IMG/VR virus record: IMGVR_UViG_3300031951_021456
Span: 1 to 64,000 of that record
Reading direction: 5' to 3' (one strand)
Length of the DNA stretch: 64,000 bases
Part shown: positions 103 to 11,610 of the stretch, piece after piece
How the letters are laid out: each line of letters begins with the position of its first letter
Numbering within the stretch: position 1 is the stretch's first letter
Made by a program: the position numbers and the translations under genes
Notes under the pieces: model-generated
What the model was told of the DNA's origin: nothing
Seen by the model: only the letters and a program-made list of their open reading frames with translations
Database searches by the model: none

Positions 103-108
103 CATTTA

Positions 109-128
109 CACACACACACACACACACA
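109..128. repeat. (CA)10 microsatellite in the leader of ORF 137..283
   Basis: Direct reading. Confidence 0.95.
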
Positions 129-724: not shown

Positions 725-1477
725 ATGGAACTTCAGCAACTTGACTGGAAAAATTACACAACTGAAACGAATATTTTCAACTATAAAATTCCAAATGTTG
801 ATGAAAATATTGCCACGATTGAAGTAATATCTACTAAGAATAGTAATAGCGGTGAAACAAAATCTGTAGTAACTATTAATAAGACCACAACTAATAAGGT
901 TCTGAAAGAGTGTACTCCAGCTTTTGTTAAGCGTTCTTTTTTTGAACTAATTAAAACTAAATCCCCATTTGATTATCGTTCTCTTACACTAGAAGATTAC
1001 CTATTTTCTGATGATAGCATTTTATCTGAAGATATATCGGAGAAAAATTTGATTTGGTTTTATTTTAGTGGAGATATGTTGTTTAAGACGAATGGAATTC
1101 CGATTGCCACACCAATATATTATGATTATAATTGTACTCCATTTTCAAACGAATATTGCTATCTTAAACCTTTATTAAATTATTTAAAAGAACATCCATG
1201 GGTCGTAAATAAAGAAGACCTTGAAATTGAAAACATACCATATTATAATTCTGAAAAGAATCGTGATAGATGTATTAGGGATATTTGTATTTGTCCAGAT
1301 CAAGATACCTATGATAGAGTTTATCAACAGTATAGTGGAGATAAATATTTTTCTCGTAGAATTAGAGAAGCTATTTCTAGCCAACTGTTTATGTATAATT
1401 CTGAAAAACACCATGATTGGCTCGGTATCGCACCTTTTCTAAAAAATCCACCCAAACAACTGGCACAAGACTCTTGA
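725..1477 (+). CDS. Hypothetical protein
   Basis: 250-aa ORF on the majority strand. Confidence 0.75.
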   Translation: MELQQLDWKNYTTETNIFNYKIPNVDENIATIEVISTKNSNSGETKSVVTINKTTTNKVLKECTPAFVKRSFFELIKTKSPFDYRSLTLEDYLFSDDSILSEDISEKNLIWFYFSGDMLFKTNGIPIATPIYYDYNCTPFSNEYCYLKPLLNYLKEHPWVVNKEDLEIENIPYYNSEKNRDRCIRDICICPDQDTYDRVYQQYSGDKYFSRRIREAISSQLFMYNSEKHHDWLGIAPFLKNPPKQLAQDS

Positions 1478-1502
1478 CCTTTTGAGAAAACTCTGCTAAC
1501 TT
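1445..1502 (+). promoter_or_regulatory. Sigma70-type early promoter with upstream half-palindrome
   Basis: TTGACC(1474)-17 bp-TAACTT(1497) with extended TG; AACTGGCAC at 1458-1466. Confidence 0.7.
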
Positions 1503-1514
1503 AAGTAAGTCAAG

Positions 1515-1572
1515 AGATGAGGCAGCAATCAAAAAGCTCTAGACATTTAATCTAACCAGCAAACTCATCTAG
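1515..1572 (+). ncRNA. CAGCA stem element copy 1, inner anticodon-like hairpin (TTT)
   Basis: AGATGAG/CTCATCT outer stem, GCAGCAA, inner TAGA-CATTTAA-TCTA. Confidence 0.65.
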
Positions 1573-1592
1573 TAACACACCACACAAAAATT

Positions 1593-1823
1593 ATGAAAAC
1601 TCATAGACAACTTGAACCACATGAAGTCCAGATGGTTCAAGAGCATGTTGATTTGGAAGCACGAATTCAGCGATTTCAGCAATTCATTCAAAATCCAGGA
1701 AATGTGAATTTTTCAGAAGCTGAAATTGCTAGAATGAAAGCTCAAGAGATGGCTATGAGCATGTATTTGAGCATCTTGAGTGATAGACTAGCTGTAGTAT
1801 TTAAAGAAACTGGAAACGGTTAA
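1593..1823 (+). CDS. Small coiled-coil phage protein (crAss001_48-like)
   Basis: EHVDLEARIQRFQQFI...QEMAMSMYLSILSDR pattern. Confidence 0.6.
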   Translation: MKTHRQLEPHEVQMVQEHVDLEARIQRFQQFIQNPGNVNFSEAEIARMKAQEMAMSMYLSILSDRLAVVFKETGNG

Positions 1824-1837
1824 TTAAATACAATAAA

Positions 1838-1875
1838 AAGTTGATACAGCATCAACAAAACAAACAATCAACTTG
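1838..1875 (+). promoter_or_regulatory. CAGCA stem element copy 2 (no inner hairpin) abutting the RBS of the DUF2828 gene
   Basis: AAGTTGAT-ACAGCA...ATCAACTT-GAGG-N6-ATG(1885). Confidence 0.65.
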
Positions 1876-1884
1876 AGGTTAATT

Positions 1885-3348
1885 ATGACTTTTATTCAAG
1901 CTCTTAAAAGTGAATTGAATACCACTACAACTGAAAATGGCGCAAAGGCTTATAATTCTACTACAAATGAATGCCTGGATCTTTATGGCTCAATCGGTGC
2001 ATGTCGTACTAATTTGACTCATGCAGAACGTCTCTTCTTTAATGCATATGAGCAAGACCCGGAAACTGCTGTAAGAATTCTATTCTATTCAAGGGATATT
2101 CGGGGCGCAAGTCAAGGCGAACGTGCAGTGTTTAGGGCATTAATGCCGAAACTTGCACAAAAGAATCCTAAGGTAGCTTCCCGCCTAGTTTCACTGATTC
2201 CATACTACGGTCGCTGGGATGATCTCCTGTGCCTTGAAGGAACTTTGGTTTGGACTGAGGTACTTGAGACTATCAAAACTCAACTAAATGAAGATCTTAA
2301 TAGTGAGAAAGTATCGCTAGCTGCAAAATGGATGCCGAGTATCAATGCTTCTTCAAAAGAAAGCAAGCGTCTTGGTCGTCTAATTGCAGATCACATGGGC
2401 TGGTCAGAACGACAGTACCGGAAGAATCTTGCAACTCTACGAGCAAAGATTAACATCGTAGAAACTTCAATGTGCAAAAAGGATTGGAGTTCTATTGATT
2501 ATGAACGTCTTCCTTCCCGCGCTGCGATGATGTATCGCAATGCATTCAAAAAACATGATGAGGATCGCTATTCTGAATATCTCTCTCGTGTAGAGAACGG
2601 TGAAGCAAAGATCAATACGGGAACTCTTTTTCCTTATGATATTGTGAATAAGTATCTCTACAAAGGTTCTACCAACGATAAGACTCTTGAACAACAATGG
2701 GATGCTCTTCCTGATTATATGGAAGGTTTGGAATTCAACGGACTTGTTGTTGCTGATGTTTCATATTCAATGACATGGAATGGGGGAATGCCAATGGCTG
2801 TATGTCTCTCTCTTGCAGTTTATATTGCTGAGCGCAATCAATCAGAGATTTGGAAAAACAAATTTCTAACTTTCTCTCAATCTCCAACACTTGAAACTAT
2901 TCTAGGTAACACTATTGAAGAAAAAATCAGACATATTCTCAAATCAGATCCGGGAGGAAACACTGATCTGATGGCTACATTTAAAGTAATTCTTGATTCC
3001 GCAACTTCCAATAATGTCGCAGCAAATGATATGCCACAGAAACTGATCATTGTTTCTGATATGCAATTTGATCAGGCTTGCAGATCTAACAAGCGTACTA
3101 ATTTTGAACAGATTCAAAAGCTGTATCGTAAGGCTGGTTACGAAATGCCAGAGCTAGTATTCTGGAATGTAAATGCAAGTGCTAATGTGCCTATTCAAGC
3201 TGATGACACTGGAACAGCTCTTGTTTCTGGCTGTAGTCCTGCTATTCTGAAGAGTGTTTTGAGTGGTAAAATCATATCTCCAGTAGAAGTGATGATGAAT
3301 AGTCTTTATGTGGAACGCTATGATCCAATTGGACTAGCCTTTGCATAA
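1885..3348 (+). CDS. DUF2828 family protein with C-terminal vWA domain (Ro60/TROVE-like architecture)
   Basis: TTENG, RDIRG..GER, YGRWDDL, LAAKWMP, MIDAS-like DVSYSM, SDMQFD, VFWNV; GAGG RBS before ATG 1885. Confidence 0.85.
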   Translation: MTFIQALKSELNTTTTENGAKAYNSTTNECLDLYGSIGACRTNLTHAERLFFNAYEQDPETAVRILFYSRDIRGASQGERAVFRALMPKLAQKNPKVASRLVSLIPYYGRWDDLLCLEGTLVWTEVLETIKTQLNEDLNSEKVSLAAKWMPSINASSKESKRLGRLIADHMGWSERQYRKNLATLRAKINIVETSMCKKDWSSIDYERLPSRAAMMYRNAFKKHDEDRYSEYLSRVENGEAKINTGTLFPYDIVNKYLYKGSTNDKTLEQQWDALPDYMEGLEFNGLVVADVSYSMTWNGGMPMAVCLSLAVYIAERNQSEIWKNKFLTFSQSPTLETILGNTIEEKIRHILKSDPGGNTDLMATFKVILDSATSNNVAANDMPQKLIIVSDMQFDQACRSNKRTNFEQIQKLYRKAGYEMPELVFWNVNASANVPIQADDTGTALVSGCSPAILKSVLSGKIISPVEVMMNSLYVERYDPIGLAFA

Positions 3349-3357
3349 ATAAACGGA

Positions 3358-3417
3358 AAGATGGTTCAGCAAATTTACAAAAACTGTTTTGCTATAACTG
3401 TTCCTCAAACCATCTTG
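3358..3417 (+). ncRNA. CAGCA stem element copy 3, inner anticodon-like hairpin (GCT)
   Basis: AAGATGGTT/AACCATCTT outer stem, CAGCAA, inner ACTGTT-TTGCTAT-AACTGT; late-promoter-like ATAAATA at 3345. Confidence 0.7.
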
Positions 3418-3423
3418 TTAAAC

Positions 3424-3533
3424 CGGGAAGTAGCTCAATTGATAGAGCAACGTAAAATGGATCTTGTTAAGATCTTAACCGCATTTAAAAGCTTTGGGTG
3501 CCGTGGTTGTAGGTTTAAGTCCTACCTTCCCGA
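3424..3533 (+). tRNA. tRNA-Pro(TGG) with 38-nt insertion (3453-3490) in the anticodon stem
   Basis: CGGGAAG/CTTCCCG acceptor, GCTC/GAGC D stem, ACG[insert]GC-TTTGGGT-GCCGT anticodon arm, GTAGG-TTTAAGT-CCTAC T arm. Confidence 0.8.
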
Positions 3534-3536
3534 TTC

Positions 3537-3574
3537 GTGGTAAGATCGTTTGAGATTTTCTTCTTACCACTTTT
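3537..3574 (+). terminator. Hairpin plus U-tract (terminator or processing signal)
   Basis: GTGGTAAGA...TCTTACCAC-TTTT, 16-nt loop. Confidence 0.45.
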
Positions 3575-3579
3575 CTAAT

Positions 3580-3631
3580 TAGATGATTCAGCAATTAATC
3601 TCTTACTGCTAATAAGACCAAAATCATCTAG
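3580..3631 (+). ncRNA. CAGCA stem element copy 4, canonical anticodon stem-loop (GCT)
   Basis: TAGATGATT/AATCATCTA outer stem, CAGCAA, inner TCTTA-CTGCTAA-TAAGA. Confidence 0.75.
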
Positions 3632-3644
3632 TCTAAATAATCAA

Positions 3645-3716
3645 AGCGGAGGAGTGTCACGGTAGCACGAGGGTCTCATAAGCCCTAAGAGTAAGTTCAA
3701 TTCTTACCTCTCGCCA
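3645..3716 (+). tRNA. tRNA with CAT anticodon (Met-like), bulged acceptor stem
   Basis: AGGGT-CTCATAA-GCCCT; GTAAG-TTCAATT-CTTAC; acceptor GCGGAG/CTC(T)CGC. Confidence 0.7.
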
Positions 3717-3743
3717 TTGATAGATTAATCTATCATATTTTAA

Positions 3744-3779
3744 ACCGATTTTAAAATTACAAATGACCATTTGATCGGT
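3744..3779 (+). promoter_or_regulatory. Candidate structured leader element A
   Basis: ACCGAT...TTAAA...TGACCATTTG-ATCGGT; covaries with 4468..4504. Confidence 0.5.
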
Positions 3780-3798
3780 ATGGTTTGGGAAAAATTAA

Positions 3799-4386
3799 AT
3801 GTTTAAATCTAATCTTGTTGCAACTATTCAGGTGAATGGAATCCCACTAAGGGAATTTGGTAGCAATGTATATCTACCATATGATACAGAATATCAAATT
3901 ATGTTAAAAAATAAGACCATTCTCAGGCAAGCGGTAAGAGTTACAATTGCTGGGGAAAGTATGTGGGATGGTAGTATTGTTTTAAATGGTCGTGAAACTT
4001 TTGATTATGGTAACTTTAATAGAAATAACAAGTTTAAATTTAAAAAACTTTCTGAGAATGGATCGCATAATTATCCATTTTTATTTGAAGATTGTTTAAT
4101 TATTATTCGCTTTGTTTCGGAAACTGTACCTATTATGGATTTGGATATGAATAAAAAAGCAACATATAATAAAACCGGATTTACTCCTAATGTTTCAGAT
4201 TGGGAAACCGTGTGGCCTGATTCTGAAGAAACAATGTTCTTGAAGTTAAATGGAGAATTTAAACATAAACAAATTGTGGAACCAATCACAGTAAAAACGA
4301 AGATTGAATGTAAATCATGTGGAACCAAAAATCCAGCAGGGTTTGAATATTGTTCAACATGTGGAGATAAAGTTATATTCAATTAA
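3799..4386 (+). CDS. Phage protein with C-terminal zinc ribbon, paralog of 4523..5224
   Basis: VNG..LREFG..VY.P...EY; C-terminal CKSCG...CSTCG. Confidence 0.8.
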   Translation: MFKSNLVATIQVNGIPLREFGSNVYLPYDTEYQIMLKNKTILRQAVRVTIAGESMWDGSIVLNGRETFDYGNFNRNNKFKFKKLSENGSHNYPFLFEDCLIIIRFVSETVPIMDLDMNKKATYNKTGFTPNVSDWETVWPDSEETMFLKLNGEFKHKQIVEPITVKTKIECKSCGTKNPAGFEYCSTCGDKVIFN

Positions 4387-4395
4387 TTAATAATT

Positions 4396-4452
4396 TAGAT
4401 GATTCAGCAATCTTAAAACTTTCTTATTGGTTTAGAAAACAAAATCATCTAG
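4396..4452 (+). ncRNA. CAGCA stem element copy 5, inner hairpin with TTGG loop
   Basis: TAGATGATT/AATCATCTA, CAGCAA, inner TTTCT-TATTGGTTT-AGAAA. Confidence 0.7.
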
Positions 4453-4467
4453 TCTAAATAAAAACTG

Positions 4468-4504
4468 ACAGACTTAAACACTAAAAACTGAGCATTTAGT
4501 CTGT
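4468..4504 (+). promoter_or_regulatory. Candidate structured leader element B
   Basis: ACAGAC-TTAAA...TGAGCATTTA-GTCTGT. Confidence 0.5.
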
Positions 4505-4522
4505 ATGCTCCCAAAGATAAAA

Positions 4523-5224
4523 ATGATGTACCAGAACAATCTTGCAGCGGCAATTAAGGTAAATGGAAACATTCTCCGAGAGTTTGGGGATACTGTTTAT
4601 ATTCCATTTGGCTCCGAATATCAAATTCGCCTAAGAAATTTAATTAGCTCTAGAGTTAAACTAAATGTTGAAATTGATGGACAAAACGTAACTGATGGTG
4701 GTCTAGTTTTAAATGCACTTCAATCAATTGATCTAGAGCGGTTTATTAGAAATGGAAATTTAACCACAGGCAATCGCTTTAAGTTTATTGAGAGAACTTC
4801 AAAAATTGAGAATCATCGTGGAATTAAACTAGAAGATGGTTTGATTATCATTCGCTATGAGTTTGAAATTCCACAAGTTACCTTCAAATCCTTATCCCAA
4901 CCAGTCTGGGATGCTTATGGTACTGCTAGGGTTGGGGGGACATATATAAATTCAGTATCGCAAAGATCAGTTTTCTATAATGAAACAGGAATTACTGTAG
5001 AAGGCTCTAAGAGTAATCAACAATTTAGTACAACAAATTGGCGTGGATCTTCGGGGGGAGAATATACCATAATTTTTAAACTCTTAGGTGAAACTGAAGA
5101 GAACAAAAAAGTAAGAGAACCAGTAACTGTAAAAACAAAACTTGAATGCAAAACTTGTGGAACCAAAAATCATGCGACATCTAAGTTTTGTTCAGAGTGT
5201 GGAACAGCTTTAGAAATCCTATAA
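4523..5224 (+). CDS. Phage protein with C-terminal zinc ribbon
   Basis: Paralog of 3799..4386; CKTCG...CSECG; start 4523/4526 by alignment with the paralog. Confidence 0.8.
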   Translation: MMYQNNLAAAIKVNGNILREFGDTVYIPFGSEYQIRLRNLISSRVKLNVEIDGQNVTDGGLVLNALQSIDLERFIRNGNLTTGNRFKFIERTSKIENHRGIKLEDGLIIIRYEFEIPQVTFKSLSQPVWDAYGTARVGGTYINSVSQRSVFYNETGITVEGSKSNQQFSTTNWRGSSGGEYTIIFKLLGETEENKKVREPVTVKTKLECKTCGTKNHATSKFCSECGTALEIL

Positions 5225-5260: not shown

Positions 5261-5704
5261 ATGGAAAAGTTATTTAAGCTTCTTAGTGATACACAAGCAA
5301 CACTCTTTGTTTTGTTTCAAAAAACTTGGAATTATCATCACAATGTTCATGGAACTGACTTCCCTCAGTTGCATGAACTTTTTGGTGAGCAATATACTGA
5401 AATGTTTGAGGAGATTGATCGCCTTAGTGAGCACATGAGATATCTCAACATTCGTCCAGTGTCCAGAATGGAGCGGATCGTAGAGGTTGCAGCCATTGAG
5501 GGGCCAGCAAACGCCAATCAGGAGCTTGATGCCCGTGGGATGGTAGAGCAGCTTCAGAGCGACAATGAGATGCTAATAGAGATGTTGAAGGATGTATCTG
5601 AAGAAGCCGAAAGTCAAAGGAGCTATGCAACGGCTAATCTTTCTCAAGATTTAATGGAAGCTCATGGTAAAAGTGTGTATAAATTGAGGTCATTTTTACA
5701 ATGA
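5261..5704 (+). CDS. dps: Dps / ferritin-like DNA protection protein
   Basis: YHHNVHG..F..LHELF.EQY....EIDRLSEH ferroxidase motifs; late-promoter-like ATAAATA at 5239. Confidence 0.9.
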   Translation: MEKLFKLLSDTQATLFVLFQKTWNYHHNVHGTDFPQLHELFGEQYTEMFEEIDRLSEHMRYLNIRPVSRMERIVEVAAIEGPANANQELDARGMVEQLQSDNEMLIEMLKDVSEEAESQRSYATANLSQDLMEAHGKSVYKLRSFLQ

Positions 5705-6409: not shown

Positions 6410-6559
6410 ATGAATGATCGCACTCGCCAAAACTGGCAAAAAATCAAAACTGCCCTAGAAGAATCAAACAAAACTGATTGTTATCTTTATACAAGAGCAT
6501 GTGAGATTGTAAAATCTGGAAGAGATCCAATGGAGGGGGGATTGTTTCGCCCTCTATGA
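6410..6559 (+). CDS. Small cyanophage-type hypothetical protein, not in ORF track
   Basis: MNDRTRQNWQKIKTALEESNKTDCYLYTRACEIVKSGRDPM; ATGA overlap with next gene. Confidence 0.7.
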   Translation: MNDRTRQNWQKIKTALEESNKTDCYLYTRACEIVKSGRDPMEGGLFRPL

Positions 6560-6753
6560 TTTTAAAACAAACTTGGATTACTCCAAAATACTATGACCAT
6601 CCAGAACTTGATCATTCTTCAACTAATCAAAAGCTTCTTTGTATTGAGTTTATTGATGAATCTTCAATAAAGGCGATTTCAGAAAAAGCTGCACGAATGA
6701 GAGCCCTTGAATTTTTTAATGAACCTTATGAACCACCAGAAGATCAACACTAA
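6556..6753 (+). CDS. Hypothetical protein
   Basis: Translationally coupled ORF. Confidence 0.55.
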   Translation: MILKQTWITPKYYDHPELDHSSTNQKLLCIEFIDESSIKAISEKAARMRALEFFNEPYEPPEDQH

Positions 6754-10827: not shown

Positions 10828-11610
10828 ATGAATAATCTTTGGGATGTTAATCAATCAATGATTGACAATTACTTGCAAGCATGTAGAGAATTTACAAATA
10901 ATGATGAACTCTTTTGTAATTTTAAAAGAGATTCTAGATATACTCCTGTTCTTGAGCATTTAACTGAAGAAGATGCTCGGCTATATTTTTCAGAGATGAA
11001 ATCTAAAGAAGCTTTAACCAATATAGTTTTAGATTCTGTTAAAGAAAATGATCTTTATGGAACACCAGTAATAATCAATCATTCAGAATTAGGAGCAATA
11101 TCTCCAACAACAGTTAGGTATCTTAAAAACTCCTTGGATATTGTTGCTGGCTTTAAAGATAATCTTCCCTTTAAAAAGGTTCTAGAAATTGGTGGTGGAT
11201 ATGGAGGTCTGTGTAAAGTTTTTAGTTCCTTTAATAAATTTAATTCATATTATCTTGTAGATTTTCCTGAAGTTAATGGTCTTTCTAAGAAATATTTGAG
11301 TAATTTTAAAGATATCAGGAACAAAACCTATCAAATTTCAACTAATACTCTCAGAGAAATTAAAGACATTGATTTAGTCATTAGCAATTATGCTTTCTCA
11401 GAATGCTCAAGAGAAGTTCAAGAAACTTACTATAATCTGTATATTAAGAACGCAAAGAATTTTTATTTAGTGTATAACAACTTTACCGAAAATAATATGA
11501 ACTCTGAAGCATTTATTGAAAAAGCCTCTAAAGATTTTGAGATTTCATTTGAGACAGAGCTTCGCCCACCCCACACTGTTCACATCATCTACGGGAAAAA
11601 TGCTAATTGA
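10828..11610 (+). CDS. Putative sugar O-methyltransferase
   Basis: LEIGGGYGGL SAM motif, ISNYAFSE. Confidence 0.8.
   Translation: MNNLWDVNQSMIDNYLQACREFTNNDELFCNFKRDSRYTPVLEHLTEEDARLYFSEMKSKEALTNIVLDSVKENDLYGTPVIINHSELGAISPTTVRYLKNSLDIVAGFKDNLPFKKVLEIGGGYGGLCKVFSSFNKFNSYYLVDFPEVNGLSKKYLSNFKDIRNKTYQISTNTLREIKDIDLVISNYAFSECSREVQETYYNLYIKNAKNFYLVYNNFTENNMNSEAFIEKASKDFEISFETELRPPHTVHIIYGKNAN

What the first reader, a model, noticed from the sequence alone, without database searches (positions are those of the whole stretch)
1515..4452. Candidate new RNA-protein system: DUF2828/vWA (Ro60-like) protein surrounded by CAGCA stem RNAs carrying anticodon-like stem-loops
Seen: five dispersed elements (1515, 1838, 3358, 3580, 4396) share a 7-9 bp outer stem whose sequence changes while pairing is kept (AGATGAG/CTCATCT, AAGTTGAT/ATCAACTT, AAGATGGTT/AACCATCTT, TAGATGATT/AATCATCTA). 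Each has an invariant unpaired CAGCA after the 5' strand, A-rich linkers and a CT(A/T)G end. Four enclose a different inner hairpin shaped like a tRNA anticodon arm: TAGA-CATTTAA-TCTA (TTT, Lys-like), ACTGTT-TTGCTAT-AACTGT (GCT, Ser), TCTTA-CTGCTAA-TAAGA (GCT, canonical 5 bp + 7 nt) and TTTCT-TATTGGTTT-AGAAA (TGG or GGT, ambiguous). They flank the DUF2828 gene, are interleaved with real tRNAs, and I found none elsewhere in the 64 kb. Established: Ro60/Rsr (TROVE + vWA) proteins bind bulged stems of Y RNAs, some tRNA-like, and hosts use anticodon nucleases against phage. Inference: the protein binds the CAGCA stem as a handle and presents interchangeable anticodon loops as decoys, sensors or repair parts against tRNA-cleaving defence.
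Basis: partly seen in the sequence, partly recalled or inferred. Interest (0 to 1): 0.92.

Follow-up and report, generated by a model that had tools for sequence, protein, structure and literature searches.

The report
Ro60-like phage protein with partner RNAs
A cyanophage gene for a distant, ring-shaped relative of the Ro60 RNA-binding protein is flanked by five small structured RNAs sharing a conserved "handle"; the same pairing recurs in hundreds of phages, it is not in Rfam 15 and I found it in no paper I searched, and the handle closely resembles the enigmatic "Class I" RNAs of social amoebae.

Summary
Exactly five elements lie on the + strand (1513-1572, 1837-1875, 3357-3417, 3579-3631, 4395-4452), and nothing comparable occurs elsewhere in the 64 kb.

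Each element has an 8-10 bp terminal stem with strong covariation. The stem base is an invariant (A/U)AG...CU(U/A)G, and an invariant unpaired CAGCA(A) follows the 5' strand.

The gene between them (1885-3348; Pfam DUF2828 + DUF7788) folds as a Ro60/TROVE-like HEAT ring plus a vWA domain with an intact MIDAS motif.

The same RNA accompanies DUF2828 genes in uncultured and cultured phages and in bacterial and archaeal contigs. All 180, 79 and 71 covariance-model hits lie on the gene's strand and cluster within 500 nt of the gene. Cultured examples are Felixounavirus, Listeria P100, cluster L mycobacteriophages, and Bacillus and Campylobacter phages.

In relatives the handle carries whole tRNAs, circularly permuted YrlA-like tRNA mimics, T-arms or plain hairpins. 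The window's odd 110-nt "tRNA" (3424-3533) carries a closed copy of the handle in place of its anticodon arm.

Best reading: a Y-RNA-like partner family for a Ro60-like protein, with one copy placed as a likely autoregulatory operator. The "anticodon decoy" idea is only weakly supported.

No Rfam family covers these RNAs, but dictyostelid Class I RNAs share the stem ends and the UUACAGCAA core.

The parts
1513..1572 (+). Handle RNA E1: stem AGATGAG/CTCATCT, one unpaired G, CAGCAA, payload hairpin TAGA-CATTTAA-TCTA (1542-1556), 3' end CTAG
   Evidence: (43.3 bits). Orthologous E1-type elements with the same payload hairpin occur in related cyanophage loci.
1837..1875 (+). Handle RNA E2: minimal handle (AAGTTGAT/ATCAACTT, A, CAGCA, 21-nt A/C-rich linker) in the 5' UTR of the DUF2828 gene. 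Its invariant 3' G is the first base of the GAGG Shine-Dalgarno (1875-1878). Likely translational operator.
   Evidence: 36.7 bits. In the 19 loci of the cyanophage clade (one phage lineage) a handle ends 7-13 nt before the DUF2828 start. Model hits end 3-30 nt before the start in many loci whose proteins are only 33-46% identical.
1885..3348 (+). Gene for a 487-aa DUF2828 + DUF7788 protein: Ro60-like HEAT-repeat ring plus vWA domain with an invariant DxSxS MIDAS motif (D291, S293, S295)
   Evidence: Pfam E 2e-40 and 2.5e-48. Alignment of 28 homologues. AF2 pLDDT 84.8. Foldseek PDB top 10 hits are all Ro60/TROVE, E 1e-7 to 3e-4, TM 0.37-0.60. BFVD matches to DUF2828 proteins of phages and giant viruses, TM up to 0.80.
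3357..3417 (+). Handle RNA E3: stem AAGATGGTT/AACCATCTT, CAGCAA, weakly structured payload. Ends 6 nt before the tRNA-like RNA.
   Evidence: (47.1 bits).
3424..3533 (+). tRNA-like RNA with normal acceptor, D and T arms. The anticodon arm is replaced by a closed, slightly degenerate handle: GGATCTT - loop GTT - AAGATCT (3459-3475), then TAA, then CCGCA (3479-3483).
   Evidence: Rfam tRNA 44.6 bits with a 49-nt insert. Fold z = -4.0. Homologues in relatives carry the canonical CAGCAAT after the hairpin, with compensatory changes in the hairpin. The same class sits upstream of DUF2828 in Clostridia contigs. Its D and T arms are nearly identical to those of the permuted element at L055 8372-8494.
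3579..3631 (+). Handle RNA E4: stem TAGATGATT/AATCATCTA, CAGCAA, payload hairpin TCTTA-CTGCTAA-TAAGA. Ends 14 nt before tRNA-Met.
   Evidence: (51.1 bits).
3646..3715 (+). tRNA-Met (CAT). Ordinary tRNA of the same transcription unit, given as context.
   Evidence: ARAGORN and Rfam.
4395..4452 (+). Handle RNA E5: same stem as E4, CAGCAA, payload hairpin TTTCT-(9-nt loop with TTGG)-AGAAA. Lies between two paralogous zinc-ribbon ORFs.
   Evidence: (51.1 bits). Orthologues keep TTGG in a loop of 4-9 nt.

Best explanation
The five elements, plus the tRNA-like RNA at 3424-3533, are small structured RNAs. They are the cognate partners of the adjacent DUF2828 protein, a remote structural relative of Ro60. 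The system therefore resembles a Ro60-Y RNA particle.

The conserved 'handle' is the protein-recognition module. It consists of a terminal helix whose base is (A/U)AG...CU(U/A)G, followed on the 5' strand by 0-3 unpaired bases and single-stranded CAGCAA. The variable interior is a payload: a hairpin here, and a T-arm, a whole tRNA or a circularly permuted YrlA-type tRNA mimic in relatives. I infer that the payload tethers or gates the ring protein towards tRNA-related substrates or enzymes.

The minimal copy (E2) abuts the Shine-Dalgarno of the protein's own gene. It most likely lets the protein repress its own translation.

Shown: the RNA family with its covariation, its linkage to the gene, the Ro60-like fold, and the tRNA-mimic payloads.

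Inferred: physical binding, autoregulation and the biological role. That role is possibly quality control, protection or repair of phage tRNAs during infection.
For: 1. Family and structure. 53 aligned members show 92.9% pairing and 97 double-sided changes against 23 in shuffles. AG, CAGC and C-U...G are invariant. An independent set from distant loci gives 154 against 48.

2. Linkage to the gene. Model hits are 180/180 on the DUF2828 strand in 76 viral loci. They are 79/79 in loci with 33-46% protein identity. They are 71/71 in 80 bacterial and archaeal genome loci that were never used for training. A strict scan gives 145 (+) against 5 (-), with 55 within 500 nt upstream, 42 within 500 nt downstream and 1 inside the gene, although the tRNA arrays extend for kilobases. 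The rest of the window has none. In 244 kb of unrelated viral DNA only the pre-selected pattern sites score.

3. Protein. Pfam DUF2828 + DUF7788, invariant MIDAS motif, Ro60/TROVE structures as the top 10 PDB fold matches.

4. Payloads. Rfam YrlA matches the tRNA-like core of L055 8410-8482 (42 bits, model positions 23-88 only) and Faith1 6527-6651 (21.7 bits). Whole tRNAs and T-arms are enclosed in other loci.

5. The handle is a module in its own right. A closed copy replaces the anticodon arm of a tRNA-like RNA in the window and its relatives.

6. Cultured phages. The handle is present in cultured phages of E. coli, Listeria, Bacillus, Campylobacter and Mycobacterium. In Faith1 three copies follow the 'Ro-like' gene, ahead of a predicted terminator hairpin that I read from the sequence by eye; the operon is inferred.

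7. Precedent. Phage Ro60 binds adjacent Y-like RNAs (PMC12135203), and YrlA RNAs lie within 4 kb and on the same strand as Rsr (PMC4201824).
Against: - No binding, expression or end-mapping data exist.
- DUF2828 genes sit in or beside tRNA arrays, so linkage to the protein and linkage to tRNA genes are partly confounded. 12 of 102 unique elements end exactly 4-6 nt before a tRNA, as a pre-tRNA leader would.
- The handle motif (CAGCAA) differs from the GNCGAA/GGUCCGA motif that Ro60 proteins contact, so the Ro60 precedent does not transfer at residue level.
- About a quarter of distant DUF2828 loci gave no model hit, although by eye several carry relaxed handles.
- No conserved RNA-repair or nuclease gene neighbours were found in the one locus examined.
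- The pattern scan for DUF2828-less carriers had little power.
Confidence: 0.7

Rival explanations
1. The elements are punctuation of polycistronic tRNA transcripts. They are leader or spacer structures that guide or insulate RNase P, RNase Z or RNase E processing, and have no special relation to the DUF2828 protein.
For: The loci are large tRNA arrays. 12 of 102 unique elements end 4-6 nt before a tRNA 5' end, including E3 in the window. Some handles enclose whole tRNAs.
Against: - Elements pile up within 500 nt of DUF2828 rather than along the multi-kb arrays. L005 has one element among about 45 tRNAs but five around the gene.
- E1, E2 and E5 in the window, and the Faith1 trio, are not followed by tRNAs.
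- One copy recurs 3-30 nt upstream of the DUF2828 start codon in many clades.
- The invariant single-stranded CAGCAA and stem base indicate a sequence-specific reader.
- The handle also occurs closed, inside a tRNA-like RNA.
Confidence: 0.12
2. The protein holds the handle and displays interchangeable anticodon stem-loops as decoys, sensors or spare parts against host anticodon nucleases.
For: Payload hairpins are enriched for 7-nt loops (23 against 3.9 expected), and for loops with U at position 2 and a purine at position 6 (12 against 0.8). E4 is a canonical 5 bp + 7 nt arm. Cluster L mycobacteriophage LeBron encodes an RNA ligase and a polynucleotide kinase besides its Ro-like protein (PMC13148394).
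Against: - Several 7-nt loops are T-loops (TTCGATT/TTCGATC).
- Orthologous loops change size (4-9 nt for the TTGG loop).
- Position 33 is C, G, A or U among E1-type orthologues.
- Counts are inflated by orthology.
- In relatives the payloads are T-arms, whole tRNAs or permuted tRNA bodies in which the anticodon arm is the very part replaced by the handle.
- There is no genetic link to defence or counter-defence genes.
Confidence: 0.08
3. The elements are DNA-level repeats: miniature mobile elements, or recombination sites that bound gene cassettes.
For: They separate individual genes. In this phage an extra 76-aa ORF (1593-1823) sits between E1 and E2, which are adjacent in relatives. The stems are palindromic at DNA level.
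Against: - Strand orientation is absolute (330 of 330 model hits).
- Stems covary and tolerate G.U pairs.
- Payloads are RNA folds such as tRNA mimics.
- The motif is conserved together with one protein family across phages of cyanobacteria, Firmicutes, Actinobacteria, Proteobacteria and Campylobacter, rather than spreading within genomes.
- The 64-kb window has no copies elsewhere.
Confidence: 0.03

Closest known systems
Ro60/Rsr with Y RNAs, especially bacterial YrlA (Rfam RF02553) and the phage phiLo Ro60-Yrl1/Yrl2 particle
   Same: - The protein is a ring of HEAT repeats plus a vWA/MIDAS domain (fold match).
- The partner RNAs are encoded next to the gene on the same strand.
- Each RNA is built from a 5'/3' terminal stem with a short conserved motif on the 5' strand plus a variable module.
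- In relatives that module is a circularly permuted tRNA mimic, which the YrlA model recognises (PMC4201824, PMC12135203).
   Different: - The protein is not detected by TROVE. It belongs to Pfam DUF2828/DUF7788, and phmmer against PDB finds nothing.
- The handle motif is CAGCAA with an AG...CU(U/A)G stem base, not GNCGAA.
- Rfam YrlA does not match the handle part and stays below its gathering score.
- There are several copies per locus, with payloads ranging from nothing to whole tRNAs.
- One form has the handle closed inside a tRNA-like RNA with free acceptor ends.
- The system is embedded in phage tRNA arrays.
Class I RNAs of dictyostelid social amoebae (Rfam RF01414; Kjellin et al. 2021, PMC7919456)
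   Same: - Both are about 42-65 nt long.
[quoted passage not shown]
- An invariant G at the stem base pairs with C, preceded by AA.
- The conserved single-stranded motif CCUUACAGCAA lies directly after the 5' strand. Phage forms read (N)UUA/UAA/ACA-CAGCAA, or CAGCAA alone.
- The 3' end is CUGU in the amoebae and CU(U/A)G in phages.
- The rest of the RNA is variable.
- The Rfam model aligns end to end with phage elements in Faith1 and E. coli phage EC6, its conserved block lying on theirs (18.9, 19.7 and 16.9 bits).
   Different: - The Rfam scores are far below the gathering score (41.5) and are not significant on their own. Window elements give no hit at E <= 10.
- Phage stems are longer (7-10 bp against 6).
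- Class I RNAs are eukaryotic, Pol II/III-type genes with a DUSE promoter, and were reported as unique to Dictyostelia.
- Their only proven direct binder is the RRM protein Rnp1A/CIBP.
- Whether dictyostelids encode a DUF2828 protein could not be checked here.
Pre-tRNA leaders and spacers, and tRNA-like RNAs, of phage tRNA arrays
   Same: They share location in tRNA clusters, a fixed short distance to the next tRNA for a subset, and tRNA-derived arms in the payload.
   Different: They have a sequence-conserved handle shared across phyla of phages, they concentrate around one protein gene, and they also occur away from tRNAs and inside a tRNA-like body.

Membership tests
Ro60/TROVE protein family | HEAT-repeat ring followed by a vWA domain with a MIDAS motif | tested here: met
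   AF2 model with pLDDT 84.8. The top 10 PDB fold matches are Ro60/TROVE chains aligned over about 510-575 columns. DxSxS is invariant in 28 homologues.
Ro60/TROVE protein family | Sequence membership (Pfam TROVE PF05731, or a detectable sequence match to solved Ro60 proteins) | tested here: not met
   Pfam reports only DUF2828 and DUF7788. phmmer against all PDB chains finds no Ro60 even at E <= 10.
Ro60/TROVE protein family | Binds Y RNA on the ring surface and single-stranded 3' ends in the central hole | not testable with these tools
   Needs EMSA, CLIP or a structure.
YrlA / bacterial Y RNA (RF02553) | Reaches the Rfam gathering score (69 bits) | tested here: not met
   No hit in the window at E <= 10. 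Relatives reach 42, 24.7 and 21.7 bits.
YrlA / bacterial Y RNA (RF02553) | GNCGAA(N)G motif near the 5' end in the terminal stem region | tested here: not met
   The invariant motif is CAGCA(A). The YrlA model matches only positions 23-88 of L055 8410-8482.
YrlA / bacterial Y RNA (RF02553) | Circularly permuted tRNA-like domain (T arm, closed acceptor stem, D arm) | tested here: inconclusive
   Absent from the five window elements, whose payloads are hairpins. Present in relatives L055, L067, L081 and Faith1. The window's 3424-3533 has the same arms, but unpermuted.
YrlA / bacterial Y RNA (RF02553) | Encoded within a few kb of, and on the same strand as, the Ro60-type gene | tested here: met
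Dictyostelid Class I RNA (RF01414) | Short stem joining the 5' and 3' ends, conserved in pairing but not in sequence, with an invariant G:C at its base | tested here: met
   Paper description in PMC7919456.
Dictyostelid Class I RNA (RF01414) | 11-nt motif CCUUACAGCAA directly after the 5' strand | tested here: inconclusive
   Window elements have CAGCAA only. Non-cyanophage members have UUA/UAA/ACA + CAGCAA, up to 9 of 11 positions.
Dictyostelid Class I RNA (RF01414) | Reaches the Rfam gathering score (41.5 bits) | tested here: not met
   16.9-19.7 bits in Faith1 and EC6. No hit in the window.
Dictyostelid Class I RNA (RF01414) | Dictyostelid gene with an upstream DUSE promoter element | tested here: not met
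   These are phage, bacterial and archaeal sequences.
   Only E4 fits. E1 has A33 and 4 bp, E3 is mismatched and E5 has a 9-nt loop. Across orthologues, loop size and position 33 vary, although 7-nt loops are enriched.

The most novel reading that the evidence does not exclude
The phage 'CAGCAA-handle' RNAs and the Class I RNAs of Dictyostelium are one ancient RNA class, and DUF2828 proteins are its conserved partner.

DUF2828 proteins occur in phages, bacteria, archaeal contigs and giant viruses of protists, and the Pfam family is also reported from plants (papers found). This would define a second, Ro60-like ribonucleoprotein family reaching from phages to eukaryotes.

It would also give the long-unexplained Class I RNAs a candidate protein partner. 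That partner may be the uncharacterised pull-down protein DDB_G0281243.
Probability: 0.35. Interest if true: 0.93.

Novelty: new variant of a known kind. Interest (0 to 1): 0.85.

Why it matters
- **An uncharacterised protein family gets a partner.** DUF2828 proteins are encoded by at least 711 cultured phage records, including Felix O1-like coliphages, the Listeria biocontrol phage P100 and cluster L mycobacteriophages. They are also encoded by hundreds of bacterial contigs and by giant viruses, yet they have no known function or partner.
- **Ro60-Y RNA biology would extend to a second family.** A conserved, genetically linked RNA with a defined recognition module shows that these proteins are likely ribonucleoproteins. 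This reaches a protein family that sequence searches do not connect to Ro60, and it places that family at the centre of phage tRNA arrays, whose role in evading tRNA-targeting defences is under active study.
- **It is testable.** The system is present in tractable models such as E. coli K-12 with Felixounaviruses and M. smegmatis with cluster L phages.
- **The Class I RNA question opens up.** If the resemblance to dictyostelid Class I RNAs reflects common descent or a common partner, a 20-year-old open question about those abundant developmental RNAs becomes directly testable.

Tried and rejected
1. **Rfam.** All 4227 families were run on the window, at gathering score and at E <= 10, and on relatives. 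Only tRNA, tmRNA and ROOL passed, plus sub-threshold YrlA and Dicty_Class_I_RNA hits. No family covers the elements.
2. **Pattern scan for carriers without DUF2828.** I scanned 2.9 M viral contigs with an exact pattern. True elements came only from related cyanophage contigs rich in tRNAs. For none of them could absence of DUF2828 be shown. The other matches were coding-sequence coincidences. The test has low power.
3. **Finding eukaryotic or Dictyostelium DUF2828 proteins.** The profile search returned only metagenomic phage-like proteins in its top 120. Shifting the length window by putting a 1030-aa unrelated ORF first in the alignment failed. No long DUF2828 fusion ORF exists among the fetched loci. 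Avesson 2011 and the Chen 2014 supplements are not held.
4. **ORF 1593-1823 (crAss001_48-like) as a third component.** Rejected. It is absent from all other loci.
5. **Conserved RNA-repair neighbours.** None in the one locus examined.
6. **Promoter and terminator consensus scans.** Not above shuffles in 1300-4700. The TTGACC-17-TAACTT I saw by eye upstream of E1 fails the scan threshold. A better TTGACA-17-TAAGAT precedes one element in phage B3.
7. **Window 10885-10937 (17 bits).** Not a member.
8. **Literature.** Searches for DUF2828, PF11443 and 'Ro-like' found no description of partner RNAs.

Full report
**1. The observation**

The window is the first 64 kb of a 248-kb IMG/VR contig. Its closest cultured relatives are the freshwater Synechococcus phages B3 and B23 of the Kyanoviridae.

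Five elements lie on the + strand in intergenic DNA, at 1513-1572, 1837-1875, 3357-3417, 3579-3631 and 4395-4452. CAGCA sits 0-1 nt after the 5' strand and each element ends CT(A/T)G.

No Rfam family matches them, even at E <= 10. The gene they surround (ATG 1885 to stop 3348) carries Pfam DUF2828 and DUF7788.

**2. It is a real, covarying RNA family**

Phage B3 has five similar elements around its DUF2828 gene, with different but complementary stems. I fetched 80 viral loci that encode relatives of the protein, at 33-100% identity.

- A simple stem + CAGC[AC] scan found 169 elements on the gene's strand against 25 on the other strand. Shuffled sequence gave 15 and 22.
- An alignment of 53 non-redundant members has invariant A-G at the stem base, invariant CAGC(A), and invariant C-U...G at the 3' end.
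- The nine stem pairs are 92.9% paired, against 31-47% when the partner is slid.
- They show 97 double-sided changes against 23 in shuffles.
- A covariance model (R1) finds exactly the five elements in the window, at 36.7-51.1 bits. The next hit is at 17 bits and is not a member.

**3. Linkage to DUF2828**

- R1 gives 180 hits at E <= 0.1 in 76 loci (907 kb), all on the strand of the gene.
- In loci with only 33-46% protein identity it gives 79 of 79 on that strand. Covariation there is again strong, with 154 double-sided cells against 48.
- In 80 bacterial and archaeal genome contigs found independently, it gives 71 of 71 on that strand, mostly within 1.5 kb upstream of the gene. These contigs are mostly Clostridia MAGs, with some Asgard and Woesearchaeota contigs.
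- A stricter scan gives 145 against 5. Of these, 55 lie within 500 nt upstream, 42 within 500 nt downstream and one inside the gene. This holds although the surrounding tRNA arrays run for kilobases.
- In 244 kb of unrelated viral DNA, only sites pre-selected by a 20-base pattern scored.
- A recurrent copy ends 3-30 nt before the DUF2828 start codon. In the 19 loci of the cyanophage clade (one phage lineage) the distance is 7-13 nt; model hits at 3-30 nt recur in loci with only 33-46% protein identity and in genome contigs. In the window this copy is E2. Its invariant 3' G is the first base of the GAGG ribosome-binding site.

**4. Cultured phages**

tblastn finds the protein in 711 phage records. 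These include Felixounavirus, cluster L mycobacteriophages (annotated 'Ro-like RNA binding protein'), Listeria P100-like, Staphylococcus, Campylobacter, Enterococcus, Bacillus and KVP40-like Vibrio phages.

Handles are present, always on the gene's strand, in these phages:

| Phage | Copies | Position |
|---|---|---|
| E. coli phage EC6 | 4 | downstream of the gene |
| Faith1 | 3 | after the gene, ahead of a terminator-like hairpin read by eye |
| P100 | at least 2 | upstream of the gene |
| Campylobacter F358 | 2 | upstream of the gene |
| Bacillus MrDarsey | at least 5 | upstream of the gene |
| Vibrio nt-1 | 1 | upstream of the gene |

Outside the cyanophage clade the form is a 7-10 bp stem, then NNA (UUA, UAA, ACA or AUA), then CAGCAA.

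**5. The protein**

An AlphaFold model built from 28 homologues (pLDDT 84.8) has Ro60/TROVE chains as its ten best PDB matches. These include Thermus phage phiLo Ro60, Xenopus and human Ro60 and Deinococcus Rsr. E-values run from 1e-7 to 3e-4, with alignments over the whole length. Sequence search against PDB finds nothing.

The vWA MIDAS motif is invariant. Among predicted viral structures, the best matches are DUF2828/DUF7788 proteins of phages and of giant viruses of protists, with TM up to 0.80. TROVE and 'Ro-like' phage proteins follow at TM about 0.5.

**6. Payloads**

In distant loci the handle encloses one of the following:

- whole tRNAs, for example L074 4007-4124 and L081 4689-4806;
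- circularly permuted tRNA-like bodies, for example L055 8372-8494, L067 2218-2344 and Faith1 6527-6648;
- a T-arm only;
- a plain hairpin.

Rfam YrlA recognises the permuted bodies but not the handle. The scores are 42 bits over model positions 23-88, then 24.7 and 21.7 bits, against a gathering score of 69.

The window's 110-nt tRNA-like RNA (3424-3533) has normal acceptor, D and T arms. Its anticodon arm is replaced by a hairpin that reads 3'-strand, loop, 5'-strand, TAA, CCGCA. Relatives have the canonical CAGCAAT at that place and compensatory changes in the hairpin. Its fold z-score is -4.0. The same class (113-121 nt) sits directly upstream of DUF2828 in Clostridia contigs. The handle is therefore a self-contained module, used both open and closed.

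**7. The anticodon idea**

Payload interiors are more structured than shuffles. 7-nt loops are enriched (23 against 3.9), and so are loops with U at position 2 and a purine at position 6 (12 against 0.8).

However, several of these are T-loops. Orthologous loops vary in size, and position 33 is not conserved. Only E4 of the window is canonical. The GCU in the E3 and E4 loops can pair with the CAGCA motif itself.

I conclude that the payloads are tRNA-derived arms or simple hairpins, not a set of anticodon displays.

**8. Relation to tRNA processing**

Twelve of 102 unique elements end 4-6 nt before a tRNA, and E3 ends 6 nt before the tRNA-like RNA. For these elements RNase P would create the 3' end. 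Most elements are not next to a tRNA, so a pure processing role is unlikely.

**9. Comparison with known systems**

The closest kind is the Ro60-Y RNA particle. It includes YrlA tRNA mimics (PMC4201824), phage phiLo Ro60 with Yrl1/2 (PMC12135203), and the ROT/TROVE proteins noted in jumbo phages (PMC7824862).

This system differs in protein family, in handle motif, in copy number and in its tRNA-array context. Literature searches found no description of partner RNAs for DUF2828 proteins. LeBron gp53, the cluster L homologue, is toxic on overexpression, and that phage also has an RNA ligase and a polynucleotide kinase.

Unexpectedly, the only other Rfam model that aligns end to end with the elements is Dicty_Class_I_RNA. 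It scores 18.9 bits on Faith1 and 19.7 and 16.9 bits on EC6, all below threshold. The published features of Class I RNAs are these:

- length of about 60 nt;
- start AAG and end CUGU;
- a 6-bp terminal stem with compensatory changes and an invariant G:C at its base;
- the CCUUACAGCAA motif directly after the 5' strand;
- a variable remainder.

These match the phage handle point for point. The same group's preprint (10.1101/2020.04.05.026054) reports that one of four proteins pulled down with a Class I RNA, DDB_G0281243, has unknown function. I could not determine whether it, or any dictyostelid protein, is a DUF2828 member.

**10. Verdict**

The Ro60-like, handle-binding interpretation is well supported by comparative evidence but untested biochemically. 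The anticodon-decoy mechanism is weakly supported.

I rate this a new variant of a known kind of system: a Ro60-like protein with Y-like RNAs. It has high interest because it is widespread, absent from Rfam 15 and from the papers I searched, present in tractable phages, and possibly connected to dictyostelid Class I RNAs.

Noticed in passing
window 1593-1823: A 76-aa ORF (Pfam crAss001_48-related, E 3.6e-12) sits between E1 and E2. In relatives these two elements are adjacent, and the ORF is absent from all other DUF2828 loci. It looks like a gene inserted between two handles.
   Followed up: partly
window 3799-4386 and 4505-5224: Two paralogous ORFs (195 and 239 aa) with C-terminal zinc ribbons (DUF7577/Zn_Ribbon_1) flank element E5. 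Function unknown.
   Followed up: no
window 105-128; 38-65 and 434-460: A (CA)n microsatellite of about 11 units. Small paralogous ORFs at 137-283/516-683 and around 1-100/280-489 share near-identical segments.
   Followed up: no
window 5261-5704: Ferritin-like (Dps-type) ORF just downstream of the RNA cluster (Pfam PF00210, E 3.4e-21).
   Followed up: no
L081 2577-3168: A ROOL RNA (263 bits) lies in the same tRNA array as a DUF2828 gene and several handle RNAs. ROOL and the handle RNAs may share a context.
   Followed up: no
L017 5528-5779: A phage-encoded cyanobacterial-type (permuted) tmRNA lies immediately upstream of the E1-type handle and the DUF2828 gene.
   Followed up: no
window 3367-3396 and 3589-3611: In E3 and E4 the payload loop sequence UGCU(A) can pair with the conserved (C)AGCA motif, and this is the RNAfold minimum-energy structure. 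It may be a self-masking alternative fold. It is not general in the family.
   Followed up: partly
window 1840-1874: In E2 the 5' strand GTTGAT can pair either with the ATCAAC directly after CAGC, which puts the motif in a hairpin loop, or with the distal ATCAAC, which forms the handle. The duplicate ATCAAC is kept in some relatives (L005, L008) but not in others.
   Followed up: partly
L180, L212 (1411-1468, 1603-1660), L237 (2221-2267, 2779-2832): DUF2828 genes with model-detected handles also occur on contigs binned as Promethearchaeota (Asgard) and Woesearchaeota. I could not tell whether these are archaeal viruses or mis-binned phage DNA.
   Followed up: no
L074 4030-4103, L049 and L050 around 4000-4120: The whole 'tRNAs' enclosed by handles share an acceptor stem with a conserved A.C mismatch (TCCAGA.../...TCCGGA) and non-canonical anticodon loops. 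One has C at position 33. They may be tRNA mimics rather than decoding tRNAs.
   Followed up: no
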